Below are positions 5,227 to 53,102 of a stretch of DNA of 64,000 nucleotides, piece after piece. Position numbers and translations under genes: made by a program. Numbering within the stretch: the first letter of the stretch is position 1; each line of letters opens with the position of its first letter. The DNA is from Euprymna scolopes (Eukaryota), in assembly GCA_053919585.1 (NCBI GenBank), contig CM132795.1; one strand, written 5' to 3'. The notes beneath the pieces are model-generated. The model worked only from the letters and a program-made list of their open reading frames with translations. It was not told the DNA's origin and searched no databases.

Positions 5227-6729
5227 CTGTCATTAAGAATTCCGTTATACATCTATCGTAACATTTTCATATCATTTTTCTACTCGTGCAATACATATTT
5301 AACCTTCACTGACGAGTTTTAACGTCATCTTACTTCGTACACGTGTCTGCTATACCCCTCTGTTAATAAACAGTGTTAACGCTCTGCTGGTTAATAATGT
5401 CAGTAAATAATCCATTTTCACATTCATTAATTCTTACTTTCTTAAGTATTTATATTTCATTCGTATTATTTGTATCCTTCGAACTATTGTTCTCATATGG
5501 AGTGTAATTTTCGCAATGTTTCGGTCGATGTAACTTCTTCCTTCTTCAATCGCATCTTATCAAACTTGCAATCTTTCTGTCAAACTCGAGAATCTTTCTG
5601 TAGAACTCAGGAATCAGTACAGAATTTCGAACGGGGCCCTTTATTTAATCTAAAGGCATAGCGTGCTCTAGTTTCGTCAACCATGACCGGGTAGAAGTCC
5701 TAAGTAATTCGCAATTGTATTTTGAGTGTCGCCCGCACTGAGGATTTACTCTACATTTCCGGAAGAGTGTAACATTTTTACAACTTAATTTTATTGAGTA
5801 CTTTATCCGCTACGACACACGTCCTTGCGGAAATTGCATCGACCGAATCGTTGTGAAAATAACGCGCAATATAATAACAGTAGTCCGAAAAATCTAAGTA
5901 ATACGAATAATTAATTCTTGACGAAAATGAACTCAGTTCCATAAATTTCTGCAGTTGGTATCAATACTTATCATAATTTCTTTTTAATTCCTTTATGTTG
6001 ATATTGATTCACACACTCACGAGAGAGACCATGTTAAAGTTGCCAATATTTCTGTGATATGATCTGAATCGGACGTGGCACGAACACTGCACATCAGTCC
6101 ATAATGGTTATTAATTTATCATTCTTTTCCTTTTGAAAATTTGCTGCAGAGATGCTTCAAGGTAGCAACGCCTTTGAAACTGACTGGTAGACGAAGCGAA
6201 CACCTCAAGACAAAATCAAGAGAGACGCAAATAGATTTTCGCTTCCGTCTTAATAAGCACCATTCAGTTGCACACCTCTAATCTTATCTGCGCATCTGAA
6301 CTCCACCTTCAAGTTCATACGTGTACACAGTCATTATTTCCACACGAAATGTTTTCTTACATAGATATCACGAAAATACAAACCATAAAATAGACATTCT
6401 TTAGAAAAGATTATTTAGCACTTGTGCATTTCTGTTATTTAGGAAAATTATATCATTTTTTTTTTAATTTTTGAAAAACTCTTTTATGAAGAAAAAGAAA
6501 CAAGATTAATTAGACCCTAAACTTTTTCAAACATTTTTTCCGAAACTGGATGTGAGTACATATATGCGCGGTATCATTTTTTTTTGTTAACTTTGGGCTA
6601 GACTAAATCTACCCAATTTTTATAGTTTCGAAAACTGCCACTTTCTACCGAGGCATGGTGGAGATTTCTCAATTTAATTTTTATTCAATACCTGTTCAGA
6701 TAATACAAGTTTTTCGTTTTGCTATTGTA

Positions 6730-7410
6730 CAGGGTAGAAAGATAAAGTTGTCGCCACACAGAAAACAACTTTACAGCTTTATTTTAAAACTTAAAAAAAA
6801 ATATCAAATATCAATTTAGGTTACTTGATTATGTATTAGAGCTGACATCGATTCAATGTAAGCGCCTTCAGCCCTATCATCGTCTCAATGCGGGTCCGGA
6901 ACTGGAAGTATGCCTTTTCTAAAATTACCGGCGGGAGCTCGGCGGATGGTGACGATCAGGCAGGCTTTGGTGTAGTGGAAGGTAATGTTAGTGATGTCTT
7001 CGACGTATGACCAAACGAAGTAGTTCAGCGGTTCAGGTTGTGAGAGGAGGCGGTCAGTAAGAGAAAAGTACAAAGTCGTAGCACTACTTTTGAAGCCAAA
7101 CCTGCGTCTCTTTGGACCTGTGGGCCGGTGCTGAGTCTTGCTACTACAACCAGGACTTGTCAGCGACCACTTGATTGCACCAGGGGATCATCAAACTCTT
7201 AAGCACATCCAGCTACAGCTTTGTGTTAACTTTCAAGCTGACTTCGAAGATGTGAGGTGGCATGATGTGGTTCCTACTTAAAACCACAACAAAGACCTTA
7301 ACTGTGGCCGAAAATTTTGTTTTCATCACTCTAGACACGTCTCTGTTAGTCGTAGCAATCCAGCGATGCATTTTGAGGGCGGGATTGTGCTGTTTTTGCT
7401 GGGACGACGA
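6730..7410 (-). mobile_element. maT/DD37D-like (IS630-Tc1-mariner) transposon relic, 3' half
   Basis: Minus-strand translation HIMPPHIFEVSLKVNTK..LDVLKSLMIPWCNQV...QDSAPAHRSKETQVWLQ...PLNYFVWSYVE with stops; terminus TA|CAGGGT at 6728-6735. Confidence 0.85.
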
Positions 7411-9870: not shown

Positions 9871-11929
9871 CTGTGAATCCGCTCATTCAGACGCCGAAAT
9901 TTAAGTTCAGTAAATGTTTATTACTATTGTAGTCTTCTAGGCTGGTAATAATCAAGACGACCACATCGTTATATTTAACAAAAAATGTATTAGCAAAAGT
10001 ATATTACAAAATTACACGTCGTGATTCCGGAGTCTATATCTGTCACGAATCCTTATACAATAACGTGTTAGTCTCTGTGTAATTCCGTTATTCTATGAAT
10101 AGTTATATCAGCATTACATCTGCTAAGAAAAGAATAAGAGAAGGAATGTCAGAAAGATAGATAATTAGACATATTCGTTGCTATACATCTAATTTCATTT
10201 TGCAGACGCATTTCACCTGTTCCAAGTCTCGCCATAAAATAAAAGTAAGAAAATCTGCAAACGTTTTATTTACTGAGGTGCAACCCAAACTATTCCATTC
10301 AAAAATGGCCATTGTTATAATACAATATATCCTCATTCCAAATTAATATATGTTTCCCACTACAGTCAACTGTATATGACTCTAATTTAGCAATATTTCA
10401 CAAATTTACATTTCCCAAGATCATTTTAAAATAAACAAGGTGACAACAAAAACAAAATGGATCTCTTAATTATAAGCCCGTTGTTGAACGGATCGTATAG
10501 GTAGTGCTTTATAGTCCCTGTTTCGTGTTCATCGTCTCTTGAGAGTGAAAATTGTTTTATTATATTTTGTCTGAAGTGATGGTTCGCAAAACATAGGATT
10601 AAAATTTTGTTGAATGACCCAACTAGAAATTAAAAAAAAATAATGTGATCAAAATAAAAAAAAAATCAAACTTTTTATGAGAGTCGCTCAAGACAAGGTA
10701 TGAAGCTACTTGATGTAAGGAATTAAAAATAACAAAATGTGCTTTTCGAAAAGGCAGGAAATGCATACTGCTTGTAGTCTTGAACCTTGAAAAGACCAAC
10801 GTAGGAGGAAAACAGTCAGCAGGCGAGTAGTTGCACAAGACTGAAGTTTTAGGAAGGAAACTATTGGAATAGGAAGTTGTCTCATATCGATATATCAGAA
10901 CAAGGAATTGAGAAATAACAATTCTTTGTAAATTACGAACATTTGGAAGGTTTTCTGATTTCGAGTAATTTTACCTCTGAATATGACCTGAAAACTTCCA
11001 ACTTCAAATAAATATAATTTTGAAACATGTTGGAATTATAGGCAATTCTACAGCACCGTTTTGCTGAATTCTACGTAAAAATTAAAATCCACGTATAATT
11101 AAATTAATTCTATTAAAGAGAATATTAGAAATGACTATTAATTTTAGCATTTGTTTTGCACAGTACATTTTTCCTTTTACAGTTTACTTGGTCGTTTATT
11201 TATTTAATTGCGCACGTGCTCGCATGATTGCAATATACTGTTTGCAAGGAGACTTCAAGTGCGCTTGTTCATGTAGAATTCGCGAATCTTCAAGCCGACT
11301 CTTAAACTATCCGTTGCATACCATCTATTTGTAAACGGCTTGAGATGAATTTCTCGTTACTGAACAATCGTGCTGACGCATGACACTGAAAAGAATTCAA
11401 ACTTATAATTAAATAGTAGAGCTACCTGGCGTTTCCCAAGGTCATAAAAATAAATAGAAGCTAGATGATGTGTGAAACATCGTTATATTAAAAAAAAAAC
11501 TTACCTCTCATCCCCCTCTCTATTTCCCTAACTGTATTTTTATCTTAATCTCTGCCCCTATCTCATATTTTGTCCTTTTCCTCAACTTTTTTTTCCACCT
11601 TCGTCCAACCCATTGCCACCTCCTCTATCTTTCATGTTGATGTGTTGAAAAAAGTTTCTATAGCAATCTATTTTAAATGCAATATTGTAATCTTTCATTT
11701 ATTTGTCCTGGGCAATGCAGAGCAACATAAAACAGAACTACATTTTTTATGCCAATTCCATTCACCTGCTTTCATAATAATATAAAAAAGAAATTATGTT
11801 GATAATGAAAATAGTCTAAAGACATTGAATTTAATATTATAGGTTACATTTATTGATGATAGGCCACCCATATTAGAACAAAAGAGTATGCTATCCCCGT
11901 CAATTCACTATAAAATAACATAAAGTAAT

Positions 11930-33491: not shown

Positions 33492-34339
33492 GTCATTACC
33501 ACTCTGTACGCAAGCTCGTCTATGAACTTGCAGACGTCGATCAAATATACCAGTATTGCACACTAGAATTGTACCAACATCATAGTTTTCAAATTAAAAG
33601 TGCCAACATACTTGGCATATCTTAAAATAGCATGGCAGTTCACAGCTAATTAGAATAACTTATTTATAGTACAAAATAATTTAAACGTGGATTTTTGCAC
33701 GACCAAATATTTAAGATGAACCCTAATGCTTTAGTTTCTCATTATCGTAATATACGTTATCTTGTTTTCGTGCGTGATTGTCGTTAAAAGACGCCACGCA
33801 ACTCATCCATTCAATATCTTCTTGTTTACCTTCAGTCTACTTTGTTACTCGCGTTCTGCATTGCTATATACGTACAAGCGTCAAAAATTTCACACACCAG
33901 ACAATAATTTATTTCGCCTATAACGTTTATGAGAATAGTGGACTGAAGTTTTTTCATCTGAGTGTTTTTATCCTAAATGCGACTCCGTTATGCAAAATAT
34001 AGAGAGTATGCCTAAGTAGAATGCGCGTAATAATTAAAAGAAAAGCAATCAACTAATAAGAAACAATAAAACAATGTTAATTAATGAAAGTTCGCTTTGC
34101 AAAGGAAAATAAAAATTAGTTTACATCACTGTAGTCGCTTCCTTACCTATGACTGAGTATATTAAGAAGTTCGTTTTAATAATTTTTTAATAGTAAGAGA
34201 AAGCTTTATGCATCAATGTCAGTGTAATAAAACTCAATTTTATATATATGAGTGTGCGTGTGTGCCACAAATCTTTCCTTAAATGCTACAAACTTTTGAG
34301 GAATGTAGAAAATATGCATAAATAAAACTGACTCAATGA

Positions 34340-37300
34340 ATGAATGAGTATATTAAGGTGTAAAATGACTGAATATATAAAGGTGTTCAATGATTGAGTA
34401 TATTAAGGTTCAATGCCCACGTATATTAAGGTGTTCAATAACTGAGTATATTAAGGTGTTCAATAACTGAGTATATTAAGGTGTTCGATGATTGAGTATA
34501 ATAAGGTGTTCAATGCCTACGTATATTAAGGTGTTCAATGACTGAGTATATAAAGGTGTTCAATGCCTGAGTATATAAAGGTGTTCAATGCCTGAGTATA
34601 TAAAGATGTTCTATGCCTGAGTATATAAAGGTGTATAATGACTGCGTATATTAGGGTGTTCAATTACTGAGTATATTAAGGTGTTCAATAACTGATTATA
34701 TTAATGTGTTCAATGCCTGAGCATATTAAGGTGTTCAATAACTGAGTATATTAAGGTGTTCGATGATTGAGTATAATACGGTGTTCGATGATTGAGTATA
34801 ATAAGGTGTTCAATGCCTACGTATATTAAGGTGTTAAATGACTGAGTATATTAAGGTGGTCAACGCCTGAGTATATTAAGGTGTTCAATAACTGAGTATA
34901 TTAAGGTGTTTAATGCCTGAGTATATAAAGGTGTTTAATGATTGCGTATATTAAGGTGTTCAATGACTGAGTATATAAAGGTGTTCAAAGATCGAGTATG
35001 TTAAGGTGTTCAATGCCTGGGTATATTAAGGTGTTCAATGCCTGAGTATATAAAGGTGTTTAATGACTACTTATATTAAGGTGTTCAATAACTGAACACA
35101 TTAAGGTGTTCAATGCCTGAGTATATTAAGGTTTTCAATAACTGAGTATATTAATGTGTTCAATGCCTGAGCATATTAAGGTGTTCAATAACTGAGTATA
35201 TTAATGTGTCCGATGGTTGAGTATAATAAGTGTTCAATGCCTACGTATATTAAGGTGTTCAATGCCTGAGTATATCAGGGTGTTCAATGCCTGAGTATAT
35301 AAAGGTGTTCTATGCCTGAGTATATACAGGTGTATAATGACTGCGTATATTAAGGTGTTCAATTACTGAGTATATTAAGGTGTTCAATAACTGATTATAT
35401 TAATGTGTTCAATGCCTGAGCATATTAAGGTGTTCAATAACTGAGTATATTAAGGTGTTCGATGATTGAGTATAATATGGTGTTCGATGATTGAGTATAA
35501 TAAGGTGTTCAATGCCTACGTATATTAAGGTGTTAAATGAGTGAATATATTAAGGTGTTCAATGCCTGAGTATATAAAGGTGTTTAATAACTGAGTATAT
35601 TAAGGTGTTCAATGCCTGAGTATATTAAGGTGTTCAAAGATCGAGTATATTAAGGTGTTCAATAACTGAGTATATTAAGGTGTTCAATGCCTGAGTATAT
35701 AAAGGTGTTTAATGATTGCGTATATTAAGGTGTTCAATGACTGAGTATATTAAGGTGTTCAAAGATCGAGTATATTAAGGTGTTCAATGCCTGGGTATAT
35801 TAAGGTGTTCAATGCCTGAGTATATAAAGGTGTTTAATGACTACTTATATTTAGGTGTTCAATAACTGAATATATTAAGGTGGTCAATGGCTGAGCATAT
35901 TAAGGTGTTCAATAACTGATTATATTAAAGTGTTCGATGATTGAGTATAATAAGTGTTCAATGCCTACGTATATAAAGGTGTTCAATGACTGAGTATATT
36001 AAGTTGTTCAATGCCTGAGTATATTAAGGTGTTCAATGCCTGAGTATATAAAGGTGTTCAATGCCTGAGTATATAAAGGTGTTTAATGACTGCGTATATT
36101 AAGGTGTTCAATTACTGAGTATATTAAAGTGTTCAATAACTGAGTATATTAATGTGTTCAATGCCTGAGCATATTAAGGTGTTCAATAACTGAGTATATT
36201 AAGGTGTTCAATGACTGTGTATATTAAGGTGTTCAATGACTGAGTATATCAAGGTGTTCAATGCCTGAGTATATAAATGTGTTTAATGACTGCGTATATT
36301 AAGGTGTTCAATTACTGAGTATATTAAGGTGTTCAATAACTGATTATATTAATGTGTTCAATGCCTGAGAATATTAAGGTGTTCAATGACTGAGTATACT
36401 AAGGTGTTCGATGATTGAGTATAATAAGGTGTTCGATGATTGAGTATAATGTGTTCAATGCCTACGTATATTAAGGTGTTCAATGCCTGAGTATATAAAG
36501 GTGTTCAATGCCTGAGTATATTAAGGTGTTCAAAGATCGAGTATGTTAAGAAATTCAATGCCTGGGTATATTAAAGTGTTCAATGCCTGAGTATATAAAG
36601 GTGTTTAATGACTACATATATTAAGGTGTTCAATAACTGAATATATTAAGGTTTTCAATGCCTGAGTATATTAAGGTTTTCAATAACTGAGTATATTAAT
36701 GTGTTCAATGCCTGAGCATATTAAGGTGTTCAATAACTGAGTATATTAAGGTGTTCGATGATTGAGTATAATAAGGTGTTCAATGCCTACGTATATTAAG
36801 GTGTTCAATGACTGAGTATATTAAGGTGTTCAATGCCTGAGTATATTAAGGTGTTCAATGCCTGAGTATATAAAGGTGTTCAATTACTGAGTATATTAAG
36901 GTGTTCAATAACTGATTATATTGATGTGTTCAATGCCTGGGCATATTAAGGTGTTCAATAACTGAGTATATTAAGGTGTTCGATGATTGAGTATAATATG
37001 GTGTTCGTTGATTGAGTATAATAAGGTGTTCAATGCCTACGTATATTAAGGTGTTCAATGACTGAGTATATTAAGGTTTTCAATGCCTGAGTATATTAAG
37101 GTGTTTAATGACTGAGTATATTAAGGTGTTCAATGCCTGAGTATATTAAGGTGTTCAAAGATCGAGTATATTAAGGTGTTCAATAACTGAGTATATTAAG
37201 GTGTTCAATGCCTGGGCATATTAAGGTGTTCAATAACTGAGTATATTAAGGTGTTCGATGATTGAGTATAATAAGGTGTTCGATGATTGAGTATAATGTG

Positions 37301-39749
37301 TTCAATGCCTACGTATATTAAGGTGTTCAATGCCTGAGTATATAAAGGTGTTCAATGCCTGAGTATATTAAGGTGTTCAAAGATCGAGTATGTTAAGGAA
37401 TTCAATGCCTGGGTATATTAAAGTGTTCAATGCCTGAGTATATAAAGGTGTTTAATGACTACTTATATTAAGGTGTTCAATAACTGAATATATTAAGGTT
37501 TTCAATGCCTGAGTATATTAAGGTTTTCAATAACTGAGTATATTAATGTGTTCAATGCCTGAGCATATTAAGGTGTTAAATAACTGAGTATATTAAGGTG
37601 TTCGATGATTGAGTATAATAAGGTGTTCAATGCCTACGTATATTAAGGTGTTCAATGACTGAGTATATTAAGGTGTTCAATGCCTGAGTATATTAAGGTG
37701 TTCAATGCCTGAGTATATAAAGGTGTTCAATTACTGAGTATATTAAGGTGTTCAATAACTGATTATATTGATGTGTTCAATGCCTGGGCATATTAAGGTG
37801 TTCAATAACTGAGTATATTAAGGTATTCGATGATTGAGTATAATATGGTGTTCGTTGATTGAGTATAATAAGGTGTTCAATGCCTACGTAAATTAAGGTG
37901 TTCAATGACTGAGTATATTAAGGTGTTCAATTCCTGAGTATATTAAGGTGTTAAATAACTGAGTATATTAAGGTGTTCAATGCCTGAGTATATTAAGGTG
38001 TTCAAAGATCGAGTATATTAAGGTGTTCAATAACTGAGTATATTAAGGTGTTCAATGCCTGAGTATATAAAGGTGTTTAATGATTGCGTATATTAAGGTG
38101 TTCAATGACTGAGTATATTAAGGTGTTCAAAGATCGAGTATATTAAGGTGTTCAATGCCTGGGTATATTAAGGTGTTCAATGCCTGAGTATATAAAGGTG
38201 TTTAATGACTACTTATATTTAGGTGTTCAATAACTGAATATATTAAGGTGGTCAATGGCTGAGCATATTAAGGTGTTCAATAACTGATTATATTAAAGTG
38301 TTCGATGATTGAGTATAATAAGTGTTCAATGCCTACGTATATTAAGGTGTTCAATGACTGAGTATATTAAGGTGTTCAATGCCTGAGTATATAAAGGTGT
38401 TCAATGCCTGAGTATATAAAGGTGTTCAATGCCTGAGTATATAAAGGTGTTTAATGACTGCGTATATTAAGGTGTTCAATTACTGAGTATATTAAAGTGT
38501 TCAATAACTGAGTATATTAATGTGTTCAATGCCTGAGCATATTAAGGTGTTCAATAACTGAGTATATTAAGGTGTTCAATGACTGTGTATATTAAGGTGT
38601 TCAATGACTGAGTATATCAAGGTGTTCAATGCCTGAGTATATAAATGTGTTTAATGACTGCGTATATTAAGGTGTTCAATTACTGAGTATATTAAGGTGT
38701 TCAATAACTGATTATATTAATGTGTTCAATGCCTGAGCATATTAAGGTGTTCAATAACTGAGTATACTAAGGTGTTCGATGATTGAGTATAATAAGGTGT
38801 TCGATGATTGAGTATAATGTGTTCAATGCCTACGTATATTAAGGTGTTCAATGCCTGAGTATATAAAGGTGTTCAATGCCCGAGTATATTAAGGTGTTCA
38901 AAGATCGAGTATGTTAAGGAATTCAATGCCTGGGTATATTAAGGTGTTCAATGCCTGAGTATATAAAGGTGTTTAATGACTACTTATATTAAGGTGTTCA
39001 ATAACTGAATATATTAAGGTTTTCAATGCCTGAGTATATTAAGGTTTTCAATAACTGAGTATATTAATGTGTTCAATGCCTGAGCATATTAAGGTGTTCA
39101 ATAACTGAGTATATTAAGGTGTTCGATGATTGAGTATAATAAGGTGTTCAATGCCTACGTATATTAAGGTGTTCAATGACTGAGTATATTAAGGTGTTCA
39201 ATGCCTGAGTATATTAAGGTGTTCAATGCCTGAGTATATAAAGGTGTTCAATTACTGAGTATATTAAGGTGTTCAATAACTGATTATATTGATGTGTTCA
39301 ATGCCTGGGCATATTAAGGTGTTCAATAACTGAGTATATTAAGGTGTTCGATGATTGAGTATAATATGGTGTTCGTTGATTGAGTATAATAAGGTGTTCA
39401 ATGCCTACGTATATTAAGGTGTTCAATGACTGAGTATATTAAGGTGTTCGATGCCTGAGTATATTAAGGTGTTCAATGCCTGAGTATATTAAGGTGTTCA
39501 AAGATCGAGTATATTAAGGTGTTCAATAACTGAGTATATTAAGGTGTTCAATGCCTGAGTATATAAAGGTGTTTAATGATTGCGTATATTAAGGTGTTCA
39601 ATGACTGAGTATATTAAGGTGTTCAAAGATCGAGTATAATAAGGTGTTCAATGCCTGGGTATATTATGGTGTTCAATGCCTGAGTATATAAATGTGTTTA
39701 ATGATTGCATATATTAAGGTGTTCAATGACTGAGTATATTAAGGTGTTC
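34340..39749. repeat. 25-bp satellite array, about 215 copies, with higher-order structure
   Basis: Consensus GAGTATATTAAGGTGTTCAATGCCT; diagnostic variants recur at 847, 1521 and 2368 bp spacing. Confidence 0.98.
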
Positions 39750-40562
39750 CTTTTAATAATTTGCGATAGAAGCATTGTCTTTTTATGTCAATGTCAGTGT
39801 AGAAAAGATATCAAGTTTATAAGTGTATATTAGTTTCCTTGCAATGCCACAGGAGAGACAGTCAAGCAAAACAACCCGAAGCAAACTTCATCCCAAAGCA
39901 TCAAAACTAATTTCACAATGTTTTCGACTAGTCTATATGTACCTATCAATATATAATGCGCCTTAAAGCACGTTTCGAAATTAGAGTATGTTGTTTGCCT
40001 CTGCCTAATGACCATTTGCCCGTTCGTAGCGAATAGTCACAACATACACTCTGTATGCAAGAATATCGCCTGAACCGGGCTGATCTAGAGAAATCTAATA
40101 TCTATTTAAAAAAAAAATACTTTTACAAGTAGTTGTAGTTCCTGTAGTAATCCTCGATAGACGAATGTTTCGATAAGAAGAGTAGAAATTAGATCTTGGG
40201 TTTAATTTCGACAGCCGCGTGATTCTCGCTTCCAGTATTTGTCCTTTAGTCCTCACATCCCATCGAATTGCACTTAAATTGTAACCATAAAATAGTAGCA
40301 TACTCTACTAAAAGCCTTCAAATTTTCATGTAGTTTCAGCTCATAAGATCAAAGATATGCACATTTCAACATCCATTTGGCTACAAGTATAGATATATCC
40401 ATATATAAATATACCAGTTTTGGGGGCAATTTTACGAGTTCGAAATTTTGGAAATTACTGATCTAAATTTAATAAATAAAGGCTCGTTGGGAAGCTAATG
40501 ACCTGAATTGTATTAGGGATTATGTAACATTCACCCTTAATGTTGCAGATTACTGTTTTAAG

Positions 40563-40685: not shown

Positions 40686-41790
40686 TATAATTTCTTCATA
40701 TCTAGGAAACTACTGGTTTCCTGGAGTTTTTGCTGTTATTTTCGTTTTCAGCACACTCGAAAACCTTTAATAGTGATAATTTTAATGACTTTTCGTGGGT
40801 GGAAAGATACTACACCTTTACCAATACTTTACAAAATATCCGATATTTCCCCCTTTATGGAGGGGAGATAAAAACTTGCTGCTATAGTTTCAATTGATCT
40901 GAAATAACAGCAAGGGGGAATTTGATTCCAAATATTTCTCATATGTTATATCTCCCCTCTTTGGTTTTCATACATTAAGTAAATTTCACAGTGAATAAAG
41001 ATCATTTGATACTAGAGATATTCATAGAAATATAACATATTAGAAATATATGGAATCAATCCCGCTTTCGTTCTTAAACTACGCAATAATGTACAAAATA
41101 ATAAAATATGCCTGAATAGAAGTGAACGTAGTATTTAAAAGAAACTAATAATCTAATAAGAAACAATCAAAATGAATAATTAATTAATGCTTGTTTTAAA
41201 AAAGAATATGCAAATTAATTCAGATTTATGAAGACGCTCTTATTTCTACAACGAATTTAAAATTTCGTATAAATAATTTTTAAATTGAAAGACTGTAATG
41301 TTGTTCAAATTAACTGCCCTAATGTTGCCCCAATCTAAATCAGTAATGCTGTCCTCTATTTCTCTAATTAAAGAATATGTAGTGTGTAGGCAAGGTCGCA
41401 TAGAGAAATGATAACTTCGACACAAATTTTCCTTATGAAGGAAAAAGGTATTTATTTTTTCATTTCACGAAATCCAAACAGGTGCTCGCTTTCAGTACAG
41501 GGTATTAGAAAACACATCTCTTAATCCACATTCGCACGACTACCAGTTTTACAAAGTACGATTTTCGGAAGGGTGCTAAGAGAGAAAGGTAGTCCTCGCA
41601 TTCACCGAACATAACGGACCAAGTGCTCTTTTTCTGCTCTTCCTTATAATCTTTGCTTTTTGTTCTTACCTCCACCTTTCTTTCTTTTCCAGTTTTAATC
41701 CACGTAAGCATTTGAATCAATGATGTAATGCTGACGCTAAACCTTCGAATACAAACGCAATCATGTACCAAAAAAGAAACGTTTTTATAT

Positions 41791-41877
<87 letters not shown>

Positions 41878-41887
41878 AATATCTGTG

Positions 41888-42860
41888 GTATAATGGGGTA
41901 GATATTTATTTGCTGCCCAGCACAGCAAAATGTGGCACAAGGCCGGAATGTGGAGAACAGGCGAGCTCCCCTAAAGAAGGGGCACTCTCGCCTCAGAAGA
42001 ATTTGCCTGGGCACCCCCGTCAGCATTCACCGGTAGGGACGCCTCAGGCGACAAGCAATTAAATTGCCCCACCGGAAAGCCCGGTGGCAAGGCCTAGGAG
42101 GGTGGACCTCCTAAGTAGTACCAAGAGGTGTACCTCAATCTGACAGGTGCTGAGCCGGTTTCCGACCCCTAAACTGTCGGGCTGAGTGTCAAGAACGGAT
42201 CCTTGATGAGTACTTCTAACCTGTCTCCCTGCAGCCGAAGCCGCTAGGAGACACATCCCATCATACCAGAGTATAATGGGGTAGTTATTTAAATGCTGCC
42301 CACATCAGCATTATTTGGCACAGGCGGTGTACCTCAGTCCAACAAATTCTGGGCCGGTTCCCGGCCCCTCACCTGTTGGGCTGAGTGTCAAGTGACGAAT
42401 CCTTGACATGTACTACCCTGTCTCCCTGCAGCCGAAGCAGCTAGGAGACACATCCCATCATACAGGAGTATAATTTGGTATATATTTAATTGCCGCCCAC
42501 ATCGGCAATATTTGGCACAAGGCCTGGAAAGTGGGATACCCGCAGGCTCCCCTAAAGGAGGGGCACTCCTGCAATTTTAAAAATTGCCTGAGTAACCCCG
42601 TCGGCATTCCCCGGTCGGGGCGCCTCAGGCAGCAAGCAATAAACTTACCCCACCGGAAAGCCCGGTGGCAAGGCCTGGGAGGGTGGACCTCCTAGGTATT
42701 ACCCAGGCGGTGTACCTCAGTCCAACAGGTGCTGGGCCGGTTCCCGGCCCCTCACCTGTTGGGCCGAGTGTCAAGTGACGAATCCTTGACTTGTACTACC
42801 CTGTCTCCCTGCAGCCGAGGCCGCTAGGAGACACATCCCATCATACAGGAGTATAATTGG
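41888..42860 (+). ncRNA. Tandem 383-bp GC-rich structured non-coding element (383 + 197 internally deleted + 383 + 10-nt terminal repeat); retrozyme/circular-RNA-like candidate
   Basis: Units start GTATAAT at 41888, 42271, 42468 and 42851; many hairpins show compensatory changes between copies; G-U pairs favour the + strand. The repeat is certain; function is inferred. Confidence 0.65.
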
Positions 42861-43162
42861 TTATGATTCCGCACAGTTGGGAGATTCTATTTATAAACGA
42901 TGCTGCTAGGAACTGACGAATCGAATTAATTCGCGTTCTGCTACCAACCAATCAGAAACCAGAATTGCTCCATAAATATTAAACCTTTCTGTAGCAATTA
43001 CGCATATGTTTTTTTTTTTTCGTCTCGACACGGAACAATCTTTTGCTCTGTGGATTTCAACTCGGGAACTGTCTACTGCAAACCAGTCAACTGTCGGGAC
43101 TTGTGTAGAACAGCGAATCATCGGAAACTGTTCTGCGACTAAACATGGCTTACACTTCTAGA

Positions 43163-43204
<42 letters not shown>

Positions 43205-43333
43205 CTACTTAATTTACTCACATAAAATTAATATACGAAAGTATAGATCTGTGCGTAAACTTTAAGTATTTACTTCAAAAGTGCTCAATACGTAGGTAGA
43301 GCTAGTTAGTAAGTTATAAAATGTACATGGCGA

Positions 43334-43388
43334 TTAAGCTACACTGATTATTCCACGTTTCATCCACTCTAGGATTCTTCAGGCTTAA
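43334..43388 (-). ncRNA. Type I hammerhead ribozyme motif (Penelope-like)
   Basis: UUAAGC-CUGAAGA-AUCC/UAGAGU/GGAU-GAAAC...GUA-GCUUAA: core boxes, stem II, 6-bp stem I and GUA cleavage triplet; stem III is weak. Confidence 0.7.
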
Positions 43389-43409
43389 GCCTGAAGAATC
43401 CTAGAGTTA

Positions 43410-45202
<1,793 letters not shown>

Positions 45203-46915: not shown

Positions 46916-46954
46916 ACATATATATAATTATTTACTATAATAATTATTAAATAA

Positions 46955-46998
46955 CTACAGACACTAGTGTTTCATCCTTTAGGGAATCATCAGTGCAG
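46955..46998 (-). ncRNA. Type I minimal hammerhead ribozyme
   Basis: CUGCA-CUGAUGA-UUCC/CUAAA/GGAU-GAAAC-ACUAGU-GUC-UGUAG: stem I CUGCA/UGUAG, palindromic stem III ACACUAGUGU and GUC cleavage site. Confidence 0.85.
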
Positions 46999-47015
46999 AG
47001 TGTCACAATTAACAC

Positions 47016-48982: not shown

Positions 48983-49014
<32 letters not shown>

Positions 49015-49192
49015 GCATTAGTAAATTACGTAATTCGCTTTAAACAATTATGTCTTCTTTTAAGAACGTTGAATACAAGATGGAAAAAAGCAAATTCGCA
49101 AAATTTTCTTTTTTTCAATTCAAGCTAGGCCGAAAAGATTTTTAAACAGCTCGCAATATCAACGAAGCATTTGGCATATGCATGATATTTTA

Positions 49193-52100
49193 CCTGCCGT
49201 TTTCGCCCCTTTCCCGTTGCTACAGGACTTGGTAAAGTTGGTCGCAAGTGGACATGGACGAGTTCTTCCAGCCTGTGTGTGGAATTTTATAGCGAAGTAC
49301 TGGTCCCACTCTTTACACCCGTGGCCTATTCGTCATGGCCCAGTGAGCTGGGACGGTGACAGCGAGGTCCTCACATTGTAGGTTTTATGTCAGACTGTCC
49401 TTGTCTTAGCCTCTGGTTCAAAAACCTTCCCCGGAGGCACGGGGAACATATTGGCCAATAAGCTCGTCATGGAGCCCATCCCCTTCAGCCGGTGACCTCA
49501 GATGATGTTCGTACGCCCAGTGGTGCAATGTTAGACACCACCTCCTCATATGGTTTAGCCCGCCAGCTGAAGCAGTTTACCGGGATATGACGCTTGGAGT
49601 CAACATGTGAGAGATTTAAGGATGAGTGGGGGCCAGTGAGGCTCGTCCACCCTACTAGGTGGGAAGCAGCATGTTGGACAACGAAGGTGCTACCCCTCCT
49701 CAGAGCCCCTATGCGAAACGGAAGGTGGAAGATGATCACTGAAAGCCGCACATATATCCTGCATGCAGTCGGTACAGGTTATTGGTTGCCTGATGACAAT
49801 ATCACTCGGCAGCACCCTGATTGATCAAGGAGCCTTATCTAAGGAAGCACTGCTTGCTCTACAAGGAGAGGGGTCTAGAAAATGTGGCCTAAAAGCTCGT
49901 TTCCGTCATCCCCAGTCGGCTTGCCGCGGTCAATGGGCATCTCCCAATGCGGTCGAAATACTACAAAGAAACCTATGCACCCACCTGTAAGAGTGCAAAA
50001 GTACTGAATCTGGCATCTTGGAACATCGGAACTATCTTAGACAAAGACGACAACAACAATCAAAGCGACAACTGCTTTGATTGCACTTGAGCTGTCCACT
50101 GGGGGTAGCAGCCTCTAGGAACACGGCGCCGGATACACCCTCTTTTGGTCCGGGGAAACCTGCAACGGAAAGGGTATTTCTCGAGCATTGGCTTCCTGGT
50201 CAGAACCTCCATCGCTTCCACACTGGAAAGCCTTTCTACTTGTCTGAGGAATAAAGAATTTGCTACGCTTCTCAGTGTGTACGCTCAACTCTTCAAGCTG
50301 AACCTGCAGAAAAAGACTGATTTTATTCAGAGCTCCGCTATGTACTGCGGCGCACCCCTTCAACTAATAAGGTGATAATCCTCGGCGACTTCAACGCCAG
50401 AGTGGACCGAGACGCAATTATCTGGAGAGGAGTGCTTGGCAGACATGGCATTGAAGCTTGCAATCAAAATAGGCGTTTTACATGGAGCTGCAGCTCGTCA
50501 TCACAAACACCATCTTCCAGCAAAAAGACATGCTAAAGACAACCTGGAGGCATCCTCGGTCCAGACATTGGCGCCGCATAGATGACATTCTAGTATGCCA
50601 AAAAGACTGAAAAGATGTCTTACACACCCGAGTGCAGAATGTCATACTGACCACCGCCTAGTGCGTTGCAAAATCCGACTGCACTTAAAACCCAAACCAA
50701 GGAAGGGAGGGCCACCCTGGAAAACGTACAAGCTTAGCAAACTACAACCAGCTGTCTTTCAGGCAGGCTTGCAGTCCAAGCTTAAAAACGTCAGCGGCCC
50801 AGAAGAAGTTCCCTCACCTGAGCGCCTCTGGGATCAACTGGAAAATAACCATCCTGCGGACATCTGAGGAGGTCCTGTGGTTTTCCACTAAAAAGAACTG
50901 CGATTGGTTTGACGAAAACAATGAAGAAATACGAGAATTGTTGGAAAGGAAGAGATCAGCACCGGGCCTACTTGGCTCGCCCGTCCTGTCCGCTGAGGGG
51001 AGCAGCCTTTCGTCACATTCCGTCACATCTGCAGCAACCTCCAGCGCAAGCTTATAATCTTAAAGTTCGACTGGTGGTTCAACCTCGGAGTAAGAACGCA
51101 GCAGTACACAGACGCCGGTGACTACATCAGCTTTTATGAAGCTCTGAAGACAGTATATGGCTCCGCGTCCATGAATCCACTGCGTAGGGCGGACGGCCAG
51201 ACGCTTCTAACGGATGGAATATACATCCTGAACCATTGGTCTGGGCATTTGCAAGCTCTCTTCAGAGTTGACCGGGTCATTCAGAGCTCAGCAATCCTTC
51301 ACATCCCTCAACCGCCAGCCAAAGTGGAATTGGATGAACCTTCCTCCATGGAAGAACTCCATGTAGCCATAAAACAGTTGAAGAGTGGAAAGGCGGCAGG
51401 AATCGATGGGATCCCACCAGAGATCTGAAAAATGGAGGCCCAGCGTTGCACAGAAACTTCATAAGCTCCTTGTCTGTTGTTGAGAACAAGGAGAACTCCA
51501 ACTGGACCTCCGTAATGCGGTCATTGTACAAAAACAAGGGCGAAATGTCAGTCTGCTCTAACTACCGGGGATCACCCTGCTCTCCATCGCAGGTAAAATC
51601 CTTGCCCGTTTGCTCCTAAACAGACTGATACCTTCCATCGCAGAAGACTATTTCCAAGAAACCTAGTGTGGTTCTAGAGCAAACAGAGATACCACGGGCA
51701 TGGTCTTCGTCCTCAGACAACTGCGAGAGAAATGTCGTGAACAAAACAGGGGACTCTATGTAACGTTTGTGGACCTGACCAAGACATTTGACAGAGTAAG
51801 CAGGAAAAGGAATTGGCTGAATTTGGAGCGCCTCGGCTGCCTCCCAAAGCTCCTCAGCATGATAGTTCAGTTGCATGAGAATCAGAACGGTCAGGTTAGA
51901 GTAAATAACAACCTCTCAGAACCCTTCTTTATCGTCAATGGCGTAAAACAGGGATGCGTTCTGGCACCGACTTTGTTCAGCATCTTCTTTAGCATGATGC
52001 TAAAGCAGGCAACCGAAGATCTTTACGATGATGATACTTTCTACATTCGATATCGCCTCAATGACAGTCTGTTCAACCTCAAAAGGCTTCAAGCCCACAC

Positions 52101-53102
52101 AAAGACATTCGAGCAACTGAACGAAGACGCTGCCCTTGTTGCCCACACCGAAAGAGCCTTGCAGTTTTCCACATCCTTCTTCGCAGAGATCTTCGGACTC
52201 GAGAACAGCTTGAAAAAGACGGAAGTCATCCACCAGCCAGCTCCCCAGGTAGAGTACCGCCCTCCCTACATCACCATTGGCGAAACTAAGCTGAAGACCG
52301 TTTACCAATTTACCTACCTGGGGTGTACCGTCACATCAGATGCCAAACTCGACAGGGAAATAGACATCAGACAGGCCAAGGCAAACAGCGCTTTTGGCAG
52401 ATTGTACAACAGAGCCTGGAAAAACAGACACTTAAAAAGTTGCACAAAAATCAGTGTGTACAGAGCCGTAGTACTCTCCACCCTGCTGTACGACTCTGAG
52501 TCCTGGACTATTTACCGCCACCAATTACGACTCCTCGAGTGTTTTGATCAGCGCTATCTCCACACCATTCTCAACATCCACTGGAGTGATTATGTTACCA
52601 ATGTTTAGGTCATCGAGCGGGCGGAAATCACCAGCATCGAGGCCATGCTGCTGAACTCCCAGCTACGGGGGGTCGGGTACGTCTCCAGAATATAGAATCA
52701 TCGCCTGCCCTAGATAGTCCTATATGACGAACTCTCTACTGACCGTCGTGACAGAGGGGCACCGAAGAAAAGATATAAAGACTCTCTGAAGAAGTTCCTA
52801 GGTGACTGCCACATGTACCACCTCCAGTGATCTGTTCTCGCTGCTGGCCGTGCTACCTGGCGACGTATTGTACAACAGACTGCCGACTTTTTTGAGATCT
52901 CCGCACAGAGAATCTGCGGGAGAAGCTCTGAAGGAGGAAGATTTGGGAAGCCTCAGCAGCCACACCTGACGCGACTTTTGACTGCAGCTGCTGGGGCTAA
53001 ACTTGCTTGTCCCGCATCGGGCTCATCAGCCACAAGCGTGCCTACAGTCGATGTAGACAACCCCCTTCATAGAATGTTCGTTTGCGAAGTACAGCAAAGA
53101 AG
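49193..53102 (+). mobile_element. Full-length decayed RTE-clade LINE with 11-bp TSD
   Basis: TSD ATGATATTTTA at 49182-49192 and 53103-53113; APE motifs LASWNI and ILGDFNARV; GKAAGIDGIP; RT GVKQGCVLAPTLF; short AAG-type tail. Confidence 0.93.
51700..52608 (+). pseudogene. RTE reverse transcriptase fragment (catalytic FADD segment damaged)
   Basis: FVDLTKTFDRV, GVKQGCVLAPTLFSIFF and FTYLG; reads QLNEDAAL where ...FADDAAL is expected. Confidence 0.9.

What the first reader, a model, noticed from the sequence alone, without database searches (positions are those of the whole stretch)
41888..42860. Tandem 383-nt structured RNA element with covariation: candidate retrozyme/viroid-like circular RNA with an unrecognised ribozyme
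Seen: two full 383-bp units (41888-42270, 42468-42850) flank a 197-bp internally deleted unit, forming a GC-rich island with no credible ORF. Stems covary between copies. First stem: UUUGCUG/CAGCAAA (unit 1), AAUGCUG/CAGCAUU (unit 2), AUUGCCG/CGGCAAU (unit 3). Second stem: GCGAG/CUCGC (41961/41987) versus GCAGG/CCUGC (42542/42568). Third stem: UCUGACAG/CUGUCGGG versus UCCAACAG/CUGUUGGG. Other hairpins are retained (CCCCU/AGGGG, GCCUGRG/CUCAGGC, CCACCGG/CCGGUGG, GUCAAG/CUUGAY, UGUCUCC/GGAGACA). Established: non-LTR retrozymes are tandem few-hundred-bp repeats that make circular RNAs through self-cleaving ribozymes. Inference: compensatory changes do not arise by neutral decay, so the family was selected as RNA. 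I find no hammerhead, canonical twister or HDV core and no Pol III boxes, so any processing motif could be new.
Basis: partly seen in the sequence, partly recalled or inferred. Interest (0 to 1): 0.9.

Follow-up and report, generated by a model that had tools for sequence, protein, structure and literature searches.

The report
Structured tandem repeat inside copia LTR
The 383-nt GC-rich tandem units are real and their hairpins do covary, but they are a variable-copy repeat inside the long terminal repeat of a Ty1/copia retrotransposon (here a lone, decayed LTR), with no sign of a retrozyme or new ribozyme.

Summary
Two 383-bp units flank a 197-bp deleted unit at the stated coordinates. They are GC-rich and non-coding, fold far better than shuffles, and their stems covary across a 108-unit family alignment.

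The interpretation does not hold. The units sit inside a 1,291-bp solo LTR (window 41872-43162) of an abundant Ty1/copia family in a 5.9-Gb mollusc genome. Family copies show:
- 5-bp target-site duplications;
- a polypurine tract before the LTR;
- a primer-binding site complementary to nt 25-39 of initiator tRNA-Met;
- gag-protease-integrase-RT in full copies.

The unit lies about 20 nt after the LTR start and about 40 nt upstream of the TATA box, so in U3. Copy number runs from 0 to at least 9. Rfam finds no ribozyme on either strand.

Most likely the unit is a multi-hairpin U3 module carried in the element's RNA 3' end and in strong-stop cDNA. It would expand, contract and move between LTR lineages by template switching.

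Three features are unusual:
- a hypervariable, covarying hairpin at each unit junction;
- near-identical units in LTRs that are otherwise about 20% diverged;
- folding that is equally good on both strands.

Two other notes in this scan (s1-295670, s1-244950) probably describe the same family elsewhere. I did not check them.

The parts
41872..43162 (+). Solo LTR (1,291 bp) of a Ty1/copia-type retrotransposon. It has no internal copia sequence, PPT or PBS next to it.
   Evidence: BLAST of a clean family LTR and of a full element against the window hits only 41872-43162. Family ends are TGTTGC...CTTCTA(G/C)A with 5-bp TSDs in other copies.
41872..41887 (+). LTR 5' terminus (TGTTACAATATCTGTG), the start of U3.
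   Evidence: Homologous to the family terminus TGTTGCAATATTTTGG, which directly follows the PPT in 3' LTRs.
41888..42270 (+). Unit 1, old subfamily type (82% identical to unit 3).
42271..42467 (+). Unit 2, 197 bp, with an internal deletion of unit positions about 51-236. Its hairpin 1 is the AAATGCTG/CAGCATT variant.
42468..42850 (+). Unit 3, young 'Y' type, 97-99% identical to units dispersed over dozens of chromosome-scale contigs.
42254..42282 (+). Junction hairpin between units 1 and 2: CCCATCATAC-CAGA-GTATAATGGGG. The same hairpin recurs at 42451-42479 and 42834-42862.
   Evidence: for the sequences. Family-wide covariation of the upper stem is shown.
42851..43162 (+). 3' part of the LTR. 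It holds a TATA box CTATTTATAAAC (42887-42898), an ATTAAA poly(A)-signal-like motif (42978-42983) and the LTR end TCTAGA (43157-43162). The U3/R/U5 borders are inferred, not mapped.
   Evidence: Sequence; alignment to the same part of other family LTRs.
41793..41874 (.). (AT)20(TG)21 microsatellite abutting the LTR start. (TA)20 at 43164-43203 abuts its end. Together they obscure the target-site duplication (GTGTG against GTATA).

Best explanation
The feature is a solo LTR of a Ty1/copia retrotransposon. Its U3 region holds a variable-number tandem repeat of a 383-nt, GC-rich, multi-hairpin module.

Shown:
- The units lie between the LTR's 5' terminus and its TATA box.
- Full copies have gag-PR-INT-RT, a PPT and a PBS complementary to the anticodon arm of initiator tRNA-Met.
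- Copy number runs from 0 to at least 9.
- The hairpins are kept by compensatory changes.
- The newest unit type is at least 98% identical in LTRs whose promoter/R/U5 part is only 78-82% identical.

Inferred mechanism:
- Because U3 is copied from the 3' end of the genomic RNA, the module travels in the element's 3' UTR and in the minus- and plus-strand strong-stop DNAs.
- Selection acts there on a cis-acting structure. Its role could be RNA stability, export or packaging, or help with strand transfer. It may double as a promoter-proximal enhancer.
- Reverse-transcriptase template switching (or unequal recombination) at the 13-16-nt direct repeats TATAATGGGGTAT adds and removes units. The unit's closing or junction hairpin brings these repeats together. 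The same process would move the module between co-packaged LTR lineages.

The window copy is an inert relic: one old unit, one deleted unit and one young unit.
For: LTR identity:
- A conserved 5' end, TGTTGCAATATTTTGG, and a roughly 300-bp 3' part ending CTTCTA(G/C)A flank the units in other copies.
- 5-bp TSDs are seen (TCATC, ATACT, ATAAT, TTAAA, GCTAA).
- Full element L033 reads, in order: LTR, PBS, gag (PF14223), Pol_BBD/gag_pre-integrs/rve/SH3_retrovirus/RVT_2, PPT (AAAAAAATAGGGAGGA), LTR. Its LTR pair is 98% identical.
- The PBS GGTTATGGGCCCAGC is the exact complement of nt 25-39 of a tRNA-Met(CAT) of this genome.
- The LTR 3' part directly follows the unit array in 47 of 62 loci.
- Of 59 unit-bearing LTRs, 6 are 5' LTRs, 6 are 3' LTRs and 47 are solo or degraded.
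- The window holds only the LTR.

Structure.

Junction hairpin: 51 distinct spacers among 88 junctions. The upper stem averages 2.82 bp, against 2.06+-0.15 for shuffled spacers and 1.85+-0.14 for half-swapped spacers.

Cassette-like conservation.

Precise unit loss between 16-nt direct repeats: the L034 5' LTR compared with its 3' LTR.

Expression: contigs from two poly(A) RNA studies cover every one of the 30 bins across the full element. The unit bins are not raised above the rest.
Against: - No function of the module is shown.
- The strand is undecided. The minus strand folds better. Single-sided subfamily changes split 3 (G.U on the sense strand) to 4 (A.C on the sense strand, which is G.U on the antisense strand).
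- Seven of the 16 variable pairs are disrupted in one subfamily.
- Compensatory changes in palindromes can also arise mechanically, by intra-strand template switching, without selection. This rests on my own knowledge, not on a test here.
- Most copies end TG...GA, not the canonical TG...CA.
- The window copy's own TSD cannot be verified (GTGTG against GTATA, both within microsatellites).
- Transcription start and poly(A) sites were not mapped, because only assembled contigs were available.
- The hypervariable junction has no demonstrated mechanism.
Confidence: 0.85

Rival explanations
1. The repeats are U3 enhancer or promoter repeats acting only as DNA. On this reading the palindromes and their 'compensatory' changes are by-products of hairpin-templated mutation (quasi-palindrome correction during replication or reverse transcription), not of selection on an RNA.
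For: - The units lie directly upstream of the TATA box.
- Both strands fold equally well, and wobble changes show no strand preference.
- The palindromic, hypervariable junctions look mechanistic.
- Tandem U3 enhancers are common in LTR elements (my own knowledge).
Against: - Paired columns vary half as often as unpaired ones among the subfamily consensus sequences.
- About ten separate hairpins are kept over 383 nt in subfamilies that are 12% apart, with similar MFEs (-191 and -196).
- LTRs with 0 units still carry the TATA box, and occur as 5' LTRs of copies with intact domains. The units are therefore not required promoter parts.
Confidence: 0.3
2. The unit is a retrozyme or viroid-like element that makes unit-length circular RNA through an unrecognised self-cleaving ribozyme.
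For: - The repeat is tandem, few-hundred-nt, GC-rich and highly self-paired, and the unit ends pair with each other.
- A small rRNA-depleted RNA run of a related organism holds only a unit contig, and that contig crosses a unit-unit junction.
- Plant retrozymes are LTR elements with structured GC-rich RNAs (PMC4918200).
Against: - Rfam 15, which I assume includes the hammerhead, twister, HDV, pistol, hatchet and hairpin models, gives no ribozyme hit at E<=10 on either strand.
- The units are internal to the LTR of an autonomous copia.
- The junction is hypervariable.
- There is no unit excess in poly(A) RNA.
- A junction-crossing contig is expected from any tandem array.
- There is no large, invariant unpaired core. 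Unpaired columns are the more variable ones.
Confidence: 0.04
3. The unit is an independently transcribed small-RNA gene carried in the LTR, as 5S rRNA is carried in Cassandra TRIM LTRs. Alternatively it is a small site-specific mobile cassette that inserts at TAATGGGGTAT in LTRs.
For: - The Y unit is at least 98% identical in LTRs about 20% diverged elsewhere.
- 'Empty' (0-unit) and 'filled' LTRs occur in the same element, with 16-nt direct repeats at the borders.
- The unit has roughly 20-nt imperfect terminal inverted repeats (sequence).
Against: - There is no Rfam family and no convincing Pol III A or B boxes at a workable spacing. The young units contain a TTTT run internally.
- In the sampled loci the units were not confirmed outside this LTR context.
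- Empty and filled states are equally explained by deletion between the direct repeats.
- Recombination between co-packaged RNAs explains the spread of the cassette.
Confidence: 0.08

Closest known systems
Ty1/copia LTR retrotransposons, especially Drosophila copia-type elements primed by a half initiator tRNA-Met
   Same: - gag-PR-INT-RT domain order.
- 5-bp TSD.
- PPT.
- A PBS complementary to the anticodon arm (nt 25-39) of tRNA-iMet, directly after the 5' LTR. The copia priming mode itself is recalled from the literature, not read here.
   Different: The LTR carries a 383-nt multi-hairpin module in 0 to at least 9 tandem copies near the U3 start. Most LTRs end GA, not CA.
Tandem enhancer repeats in U3 of LTR elements and retroviruses (for example Tnt1 BII boxes and MLV 72/75-bp repeats; my own knowledge), and tandem repeats in hypervariable 3' regions of plant LTR elements
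   Same: Variable-copy tandem repeats lie upstream of the TATA box in U3. Copy number changes between copies and between the two LTRs.
   Different: The units here are much longer, GC-rich in an AT-rich genome, built of about 10 hairpins with compensatory changes, and separated by a hypervariable covarying hairpin.
Cassandra TRIM retroelements, whose LTRs carry a 5S rRNA-derived module (PMC7215508, PMC12486564; seen only as search listings with abstract openings)
   Same: A structured-RNA-like module sits inside an LTR and can form tandem arrays.
   Different: There is no homology to 5S or to any Rfam family, and no Pol III promoter was found. The host element here is an autonomous copia.
Plant LTR retrozymes (PMC4918200) and metazoan non-LTR retrozymes (PMC7229834)
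   Same: The repeats are of a few hundred nt, highly self-paired and tandem. Plant retrozymes also have LTRs, a PBS and a PPT, and GC above 55%.
   Different: - The defining hammerhead ribozyme is absent.
- Metazoan retrozymes lack LTR, PBS and PPT and have GC below 50% (PMC7229834). Here all three are present and unit GC is 0.55-0.57.
- Plant retrozymes are non-coding; this family has gag-pol.

Membership tests
Ty1/copia LTR retrotransposon (LTR of) | Two LTRs flanking an internal region with gag, protease, integrase and then reverse transcriptase (the copia order) | tested here: met
   In L033, LTR 5872-5560 and LTR 1222-524 flank PF14223, PF22936, PF13976, PF00665, PF25597 and PF07727 in that order.
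Ty1/copia LTR retrotransposon (LTR of) | PBS complementary to a host tRNA directly after the 5' LTR, and a PPT directly before the 3' LTR | tested here: met
   The PBS GGTTATGGGCCCAGC is the complement of nt 25-39 of tRNA-Met(CAT) at L065:1471-1542. The PPT AAAAAAATAGGGAGGA abuts TGTTGC.
Ty1/copia LTR retrotransposon (LTR of) | Short target-site duplication (4-6 bp) and TG...CA termini | tested here: inconclusive
   5-bp TSDs are found in at least 5 family copies. The termini are TG...CA in some copies and TG...GA in most. The window copy's TSD is unverifiable (GTGTG against GTATA, within microsatellites).
Ty1/copia LTR retrotransposon (LTR of) | The window element aligns end to end with family LTRs | tested here: met
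   Window 41872-43162 aligns to LTR positions 1-699 plus extra units.
Metazoan non-LTR retrozyme | A type I hammerhead ribozyme in each tandem unit | tested here: not met
   There is no hammerhead or other ribozyme hit at E<=10 on either strand of 41000-43800. A weak HH9-like hit 4 kb away shows that the scan can report such motifs.
Metazoan non-LTR retrozyme | No LTR, PBS or PPT context; GC below 50% (PMC7229834) | tested here: not met
   The units lie inside an LTR, and the family has a PBS and a PPT. Unit GC is 0.55-0.57.
Metazoan non-LTR retrozyme | Abundant unit-length linear and circular RNAs | not testable with these tools
   Only assembled contigs were available. They cannot show ends, circles or levels.
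Plant-type LTR retrozyme | Hammerhead ribozyme in each LTR and a non-coding internal region | tested here: not met
   No ribozyme was found, and the internal region encodes gag-pol.
Cassandra-like LTR with captured small-RNA gene | Module homologous to a known Pol III RNA, with its internal promoter | tested here: not met
   There is no Rfam match. By eye, the A-box-like and B-box-like strings lie about 200 nt apart, and young units have an internal TTTT.

The most novel reading that the evidence does not exclude
The 383-nt module is a functional, self-contained structured nucleic-acid cassette, not merely a repeat. On this reading:
- it is selected for its fold in the copia RNA 3' end or in strong-stop cDNA;
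- it sweeps between otherwise diverged LTR lineages by template switching;
- it is separated by a junction hairpin whose upper stem is re-made or diversified at high rate, possibly by the reverse transcriptase itself.

A minority version of this reading is that it also yields unit-length (circular) RNAs.
Probability: 0.15. Interest if true: 0.6.

Novelty: new variant of a known kind. Interest (0 to 1): 0.3.

Why it matters
As a retrozyme or ribozyme claim, it does not stand. The sequence is an LTR fragment of a very abundant copia family, which is ordinary.

What remains of interest to transposon biologists is a large, covarying multi-hairpin module in the U3 of an animal copia element. It behaves as a cassette across LTR lineages and carries a hypervariable but always palindromic linker. 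If the fold is functional, it would be a tractable example of a cis-acting RNA or cDNA structure in Ty1/copia replication, and of reverse-transcriptase-driven modular evolution of LTRs.

There is also a practical lesson for this scan. GC-rich 'structured tandem RNA' candidates in this genome should first be checked against this LTR family.

Tried and rejected
- RNAalifold on the 108-unit alignment gave a degenerate 18-pair consensus (-8.4 kcal/mol). Decayed copies penalise every stem, so the result is uninformative. I used the consensus MFE structure with my own slid and shuffle controls.
- Exact-pattern scans for a 28-nt conserved unit motif found nothing in metagenome contigs or viral contigs.
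- Read laying returned only Logan contigs. This gives no starts, ends, strand or circles, and 'goes back' joints are expected from tandem arrays.
- I looked by eye for a hammerhead core. CTTGATGAG occurs in unit 1 and a few old copies but is not the family consensus. Pol III-like boxes are too far apart and a TTTT run lies inside the unit. I rejected both.
- I considered that 5' LTRs systematically lack units, since both full-length copies have 0 units in the 5' LTR and 1 in the 3' LTR. Unit-bearing 5' and 3' LTRs are equally frequent, 6 and 6, so I rejected the idea.
- I tried to fetch 20 more full-length copies to compare junction spacers between the two LTRs of one element.
- A literature search found no description of this module. 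That is weak evidence, because the library is limited.

Full report
**What is in the window**

Two 383-bp units (41888-42270 and 42468-42850) flank a 197-bp unit (42271-42467) that lacks unit positions about 51-236. The units have GC 0.52-0.57, against 0.31-0.38 in the flanks. No ATG-started ORF exceeds 71 aa. Unit 3 folds at -178.7 kcal/mol (z -6.6 against dinucleotide shuffles). Its reverse complement folds even better, at -192.7 (z -8.2). Rfam 15 at E<=10 on both strands of 41000-43800 reports only spurious miRNA and snoRNA hits on the flanking microsatellites, and no ribozyme. The whole window has no hit at gathering thresholds.

**What the units belong to**

The window comes from a 5.9-Gb genome. 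RNA runs that hold the unit are labelled mollusc. A search of that genome with unit 3 gave 1,736 first-look candidates on dozens of chromosome-scale contigs. The scored hits are 95-99% identical and occur as single units and as arrays of 2 to at least 9. Unit 1 defines an older subfamily with 4,370 candidates.

Aligning the flanks of single-unit copies showed that the unit is never free-standing in those copies. A conserved TGTTGCAATATTTTGG precedes it. A conserved segment of about 300 bp follows it, containing CTATTTATAAAC and ending CTTCTA(G/C)A. Beyond these ends similarity stops, and 5-bp direct repeats of host DNA appear: TCATC, ATACT, ATAAT and TTAAA.

Some copies are preceded by AAAAAATAGGGAGGA. 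Others are followed by GGTTATGGGCCCAGC and a gag-like reading frame.

A 10-kb stretch (L033) contains a complete element flanked by the TSD GCTAA. In order it reads:
- an LTR of 313 bp with no unit;
- the PBS;
- gag (PF14223);
- Pol_BBD, gag_pre-integrs, rve, SH3_retrovirus and RVT_2;
- the PPT;
- an LTR of 699 bp with one unit.

The two LTRs are 98% identical over their shared 293 nt.

The PBS is the exact complement of nt 25-39 of an initiator-type tRNA-Met(CAT) gene of the same genome. This is the half-tRNA priming known from Drosophila copia, a point I recall from the literature.

The family is therefore a Ty1/copia retrotransposon. The 383-nt unit is a variable-number repeat in its LTR, about 20 nt after the LTR start and about 40 nt before the TATA box, which places it in U3.

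In 47 of 62 sampled loci the LTR 3' part directly follows the unit array. Of 59 unit-bearing LTRs, 6 are 5' LTRs, 6 are 3' LTRs and 47 are solo or degraded.

The window contains only the LTR (41872-43162), with no internal copia sequence, PPT or PBS. It is a solo LTR. Its own TSD cannot be read, because (AT)20(TG)21 and (TA)20 abut it.

**Is the covariation real?**

I aligned 108 distinct units and scored the MFE structure of their consensus, which is about 10 hairpins plus a closing stem at -188.8 kcal/mol.

- 22:42 AU/UA, 54/53;
- 27:37 UA/CG, 64/41;
- 23:41 UA/AU, 97/8;
- 76:102 AU/GC, 76/25;
- 77:101 GC/AU, 68/35;
- 256:292 AU/GC, 65/31.

Selection can only act on master lineages, so I also compared subfamily consensus sequences. 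The young and old subfamilies are 11.6% apart, and each still folds well (-191 and -196). Results:
- Paired columns vary in 22 of 226 cases, unpaired columns in 27 of 128.
- Of the 16 variable pairs, 6 are doubly compensatory, against about 0.4 expected by my back-of-envelope estimate.
- Three more are wobble-compatible and 7 are disrupted.

In the controls, the observed 9 covarying pairs and 224 double-changed cells exceed every slid-partner control (0-3 pairs, 29-82 cells). They also exceed all 300 column shuffles (at most 8 pairs and 110 cells). RNAalifold on the raw alignment was uninformative.

The structure is therefore conserved, but the strand is not identified. Single-sided subfamily changes give G.U on the sense strand in 3 cases. 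In 4 cases they give A.C on the sense strand, which is G.U on the antisense strand. The antisense strand is also the more stable fold.

**Three unexpected features**

*A hypervariable junction hairpin.* The 9-15 nt between CCCATCA (the unit end) and (T)AATGGGG (the next unit start, or the LTR 3' part) is hypervariable between loci. There are 51 distinct spacers among 88 junctions, although unit cores are 97-99% identical, and the spacer is the same within an array. These spacers form the top of a hairpin. Its 3-5 upper pairs differ in sequence but stay complementary around a purine-rich loop: TAC/GTA, TAAA/TTTA, TAG/CTA, TCTC/GAGA, CAC/GTG, AAAC/GTTT and TACAA/TTGTA. Mean stem length is 2.82 bp, against 2.06+-0.15 for shuffled spacers and 1.85+-0.14 for half-swapped spacers. 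A similar palindrome, CCCCATTATA ... TATAATGGGG, brackets the PPT and the U3 start. One LTR (L004) even carries an internal copy of that block. I have no demonstrated mechanism for this.

*Cassette-like conservation.* The young unit type is at least 98% identical in LTRs whose TATA-R-U5 part is only 78-82% identical. This includes the window's own LTR: unit 3 is 98.1% identical, its 3' part 80.4%. That points to cassette-like exchange between LTR lineages, most simply by recombination between co-packaged RNAs, or to extreme constraint.

*Ordered unit types and unit loss.* Arrays are ordered sets of different unit types. Units can be lost precisely between 16-nt direct repeats, as in the L034 5' LTR compared with its 3' LTR.

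**Expression**

Only assembled contigs were available. Contigs from two poly(A)-selected RNA studies cover all 30 bins of the full element. The unit bins are not raised above the rest. In a run that may be DNA, the unit bins are about 10-fold higher, as expected from copy number. A tiny rRNA-depleted run from a related organism holds only a 342-nt unit contig that crosses a unit-unit junction, which any tandem array would give. Nothing here tests circularity.

**Interpretation**

The retrozyme or new-ribozyme reading fails its defining tests.
- There is no hammerhead or other self-cleaving motif.
- LTR, PBS and PPT context is present, and GC is above 50%. This is the opposite of metazoan non-LTR retrozymes (PMC7229834).
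- The internal region is coding, unlike plant LTR retrozymes (PMC4918200).
- The junction is the least conserved part of the unit.

The best-supported account is a copia U3 tandem repeat whose unit is a conserved multi-hairpin module.
- Because U3 is inherited through the RNA 3' end and through strong-stop DNAs, selection on a cis-acting RNA or cDNA structure is plausible (inference).
- Copy-number change and spread between lineages by template switching at the TATAATGGGGTAT repeats fit the observed empty, filled and multi-unit states (inference).
- A purely DNA-level enhancer, with palindromes maintained mechanically, is the main rival.

The family was probably noted elsewhere in this scan (s1-295670, s1-244950). 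I did not check those notes.

**Verdict**

The retrozyme, viroid-like or ribozyme part is not supported. The feature is a solo LTR of a known kind of element with an unusual structured repeat. Interest is modest.

Noticed in passing
G000:C4:4110521-4126361 (locus L065:1471-1542 and 1619-1690): There is a very large tandem array (period about 147 bp) of initiator-type tRNA-Met(CAT) genes. The 22-nt anticodon-arm pattern occurs 1,583 times in the genome.
   Followed up: partly
window 46937-47012 (-): A weak Hammerhead_HH9 match (17.1 bits, E 0.24, gathering score 52) lies where another reader noted a tRNA-head plus hammerhead unit. It does not reach Rfam's threshold.
   Followed up: partly
window 43365-43408: A 44-nt perfect inverted repeat (CCACTCTAGGATTCTTCAGGCTT/AAGCCTGAAGAATCCTAGAGTT) produces spurious miRNA-family hits.
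   Followed up: no
window 34001-40000: A 6-kb block shows strong positive GC skew (+0.29 to +0.40) at GC 0.31-0.33. It is the satellite noted by another reader.
   Followed up: no
window 49001-53000: A block of GC 0.475-0.50 sits in an otherwise 0.30-0.40 window. I did not examine it.
   Followed up: no
L004 about 1878-1960 (same as L031 about 650-730): One family LTR carries, after its unit, an internal copy of the pre-PPT palindrome arm, the PPT and the U3 start (TTCCCCCATTATAAAAAATAGGGGGGATGTTACCATATTTGTCG). This suggests aberrant strand transfer or priming.
   Followed up: partly
L033 5872-5560 vs 1222-524; L034 about 6630-6934 vs 9928-10000 (continued in L026): Both full-length copies examined have no unit in the 5' LTR and one unit in the 3' LTR. 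In L033 the first 32 nt of the two LTRs are only 87.5% identical, while the remaining 293 nt are 98% identical. There is no general asymmetry among unit-bearing LTRs.
   Followed up: partly
L011 (G000:C3:41198547-41201921): A copy with a young unit (98% identical) sits in an LTR whose 3' part is strongly diverged and whose 5' end lacks the first T. It is an extreme case of the unit-versus-LTR identity mismatch.
   Followed up: no
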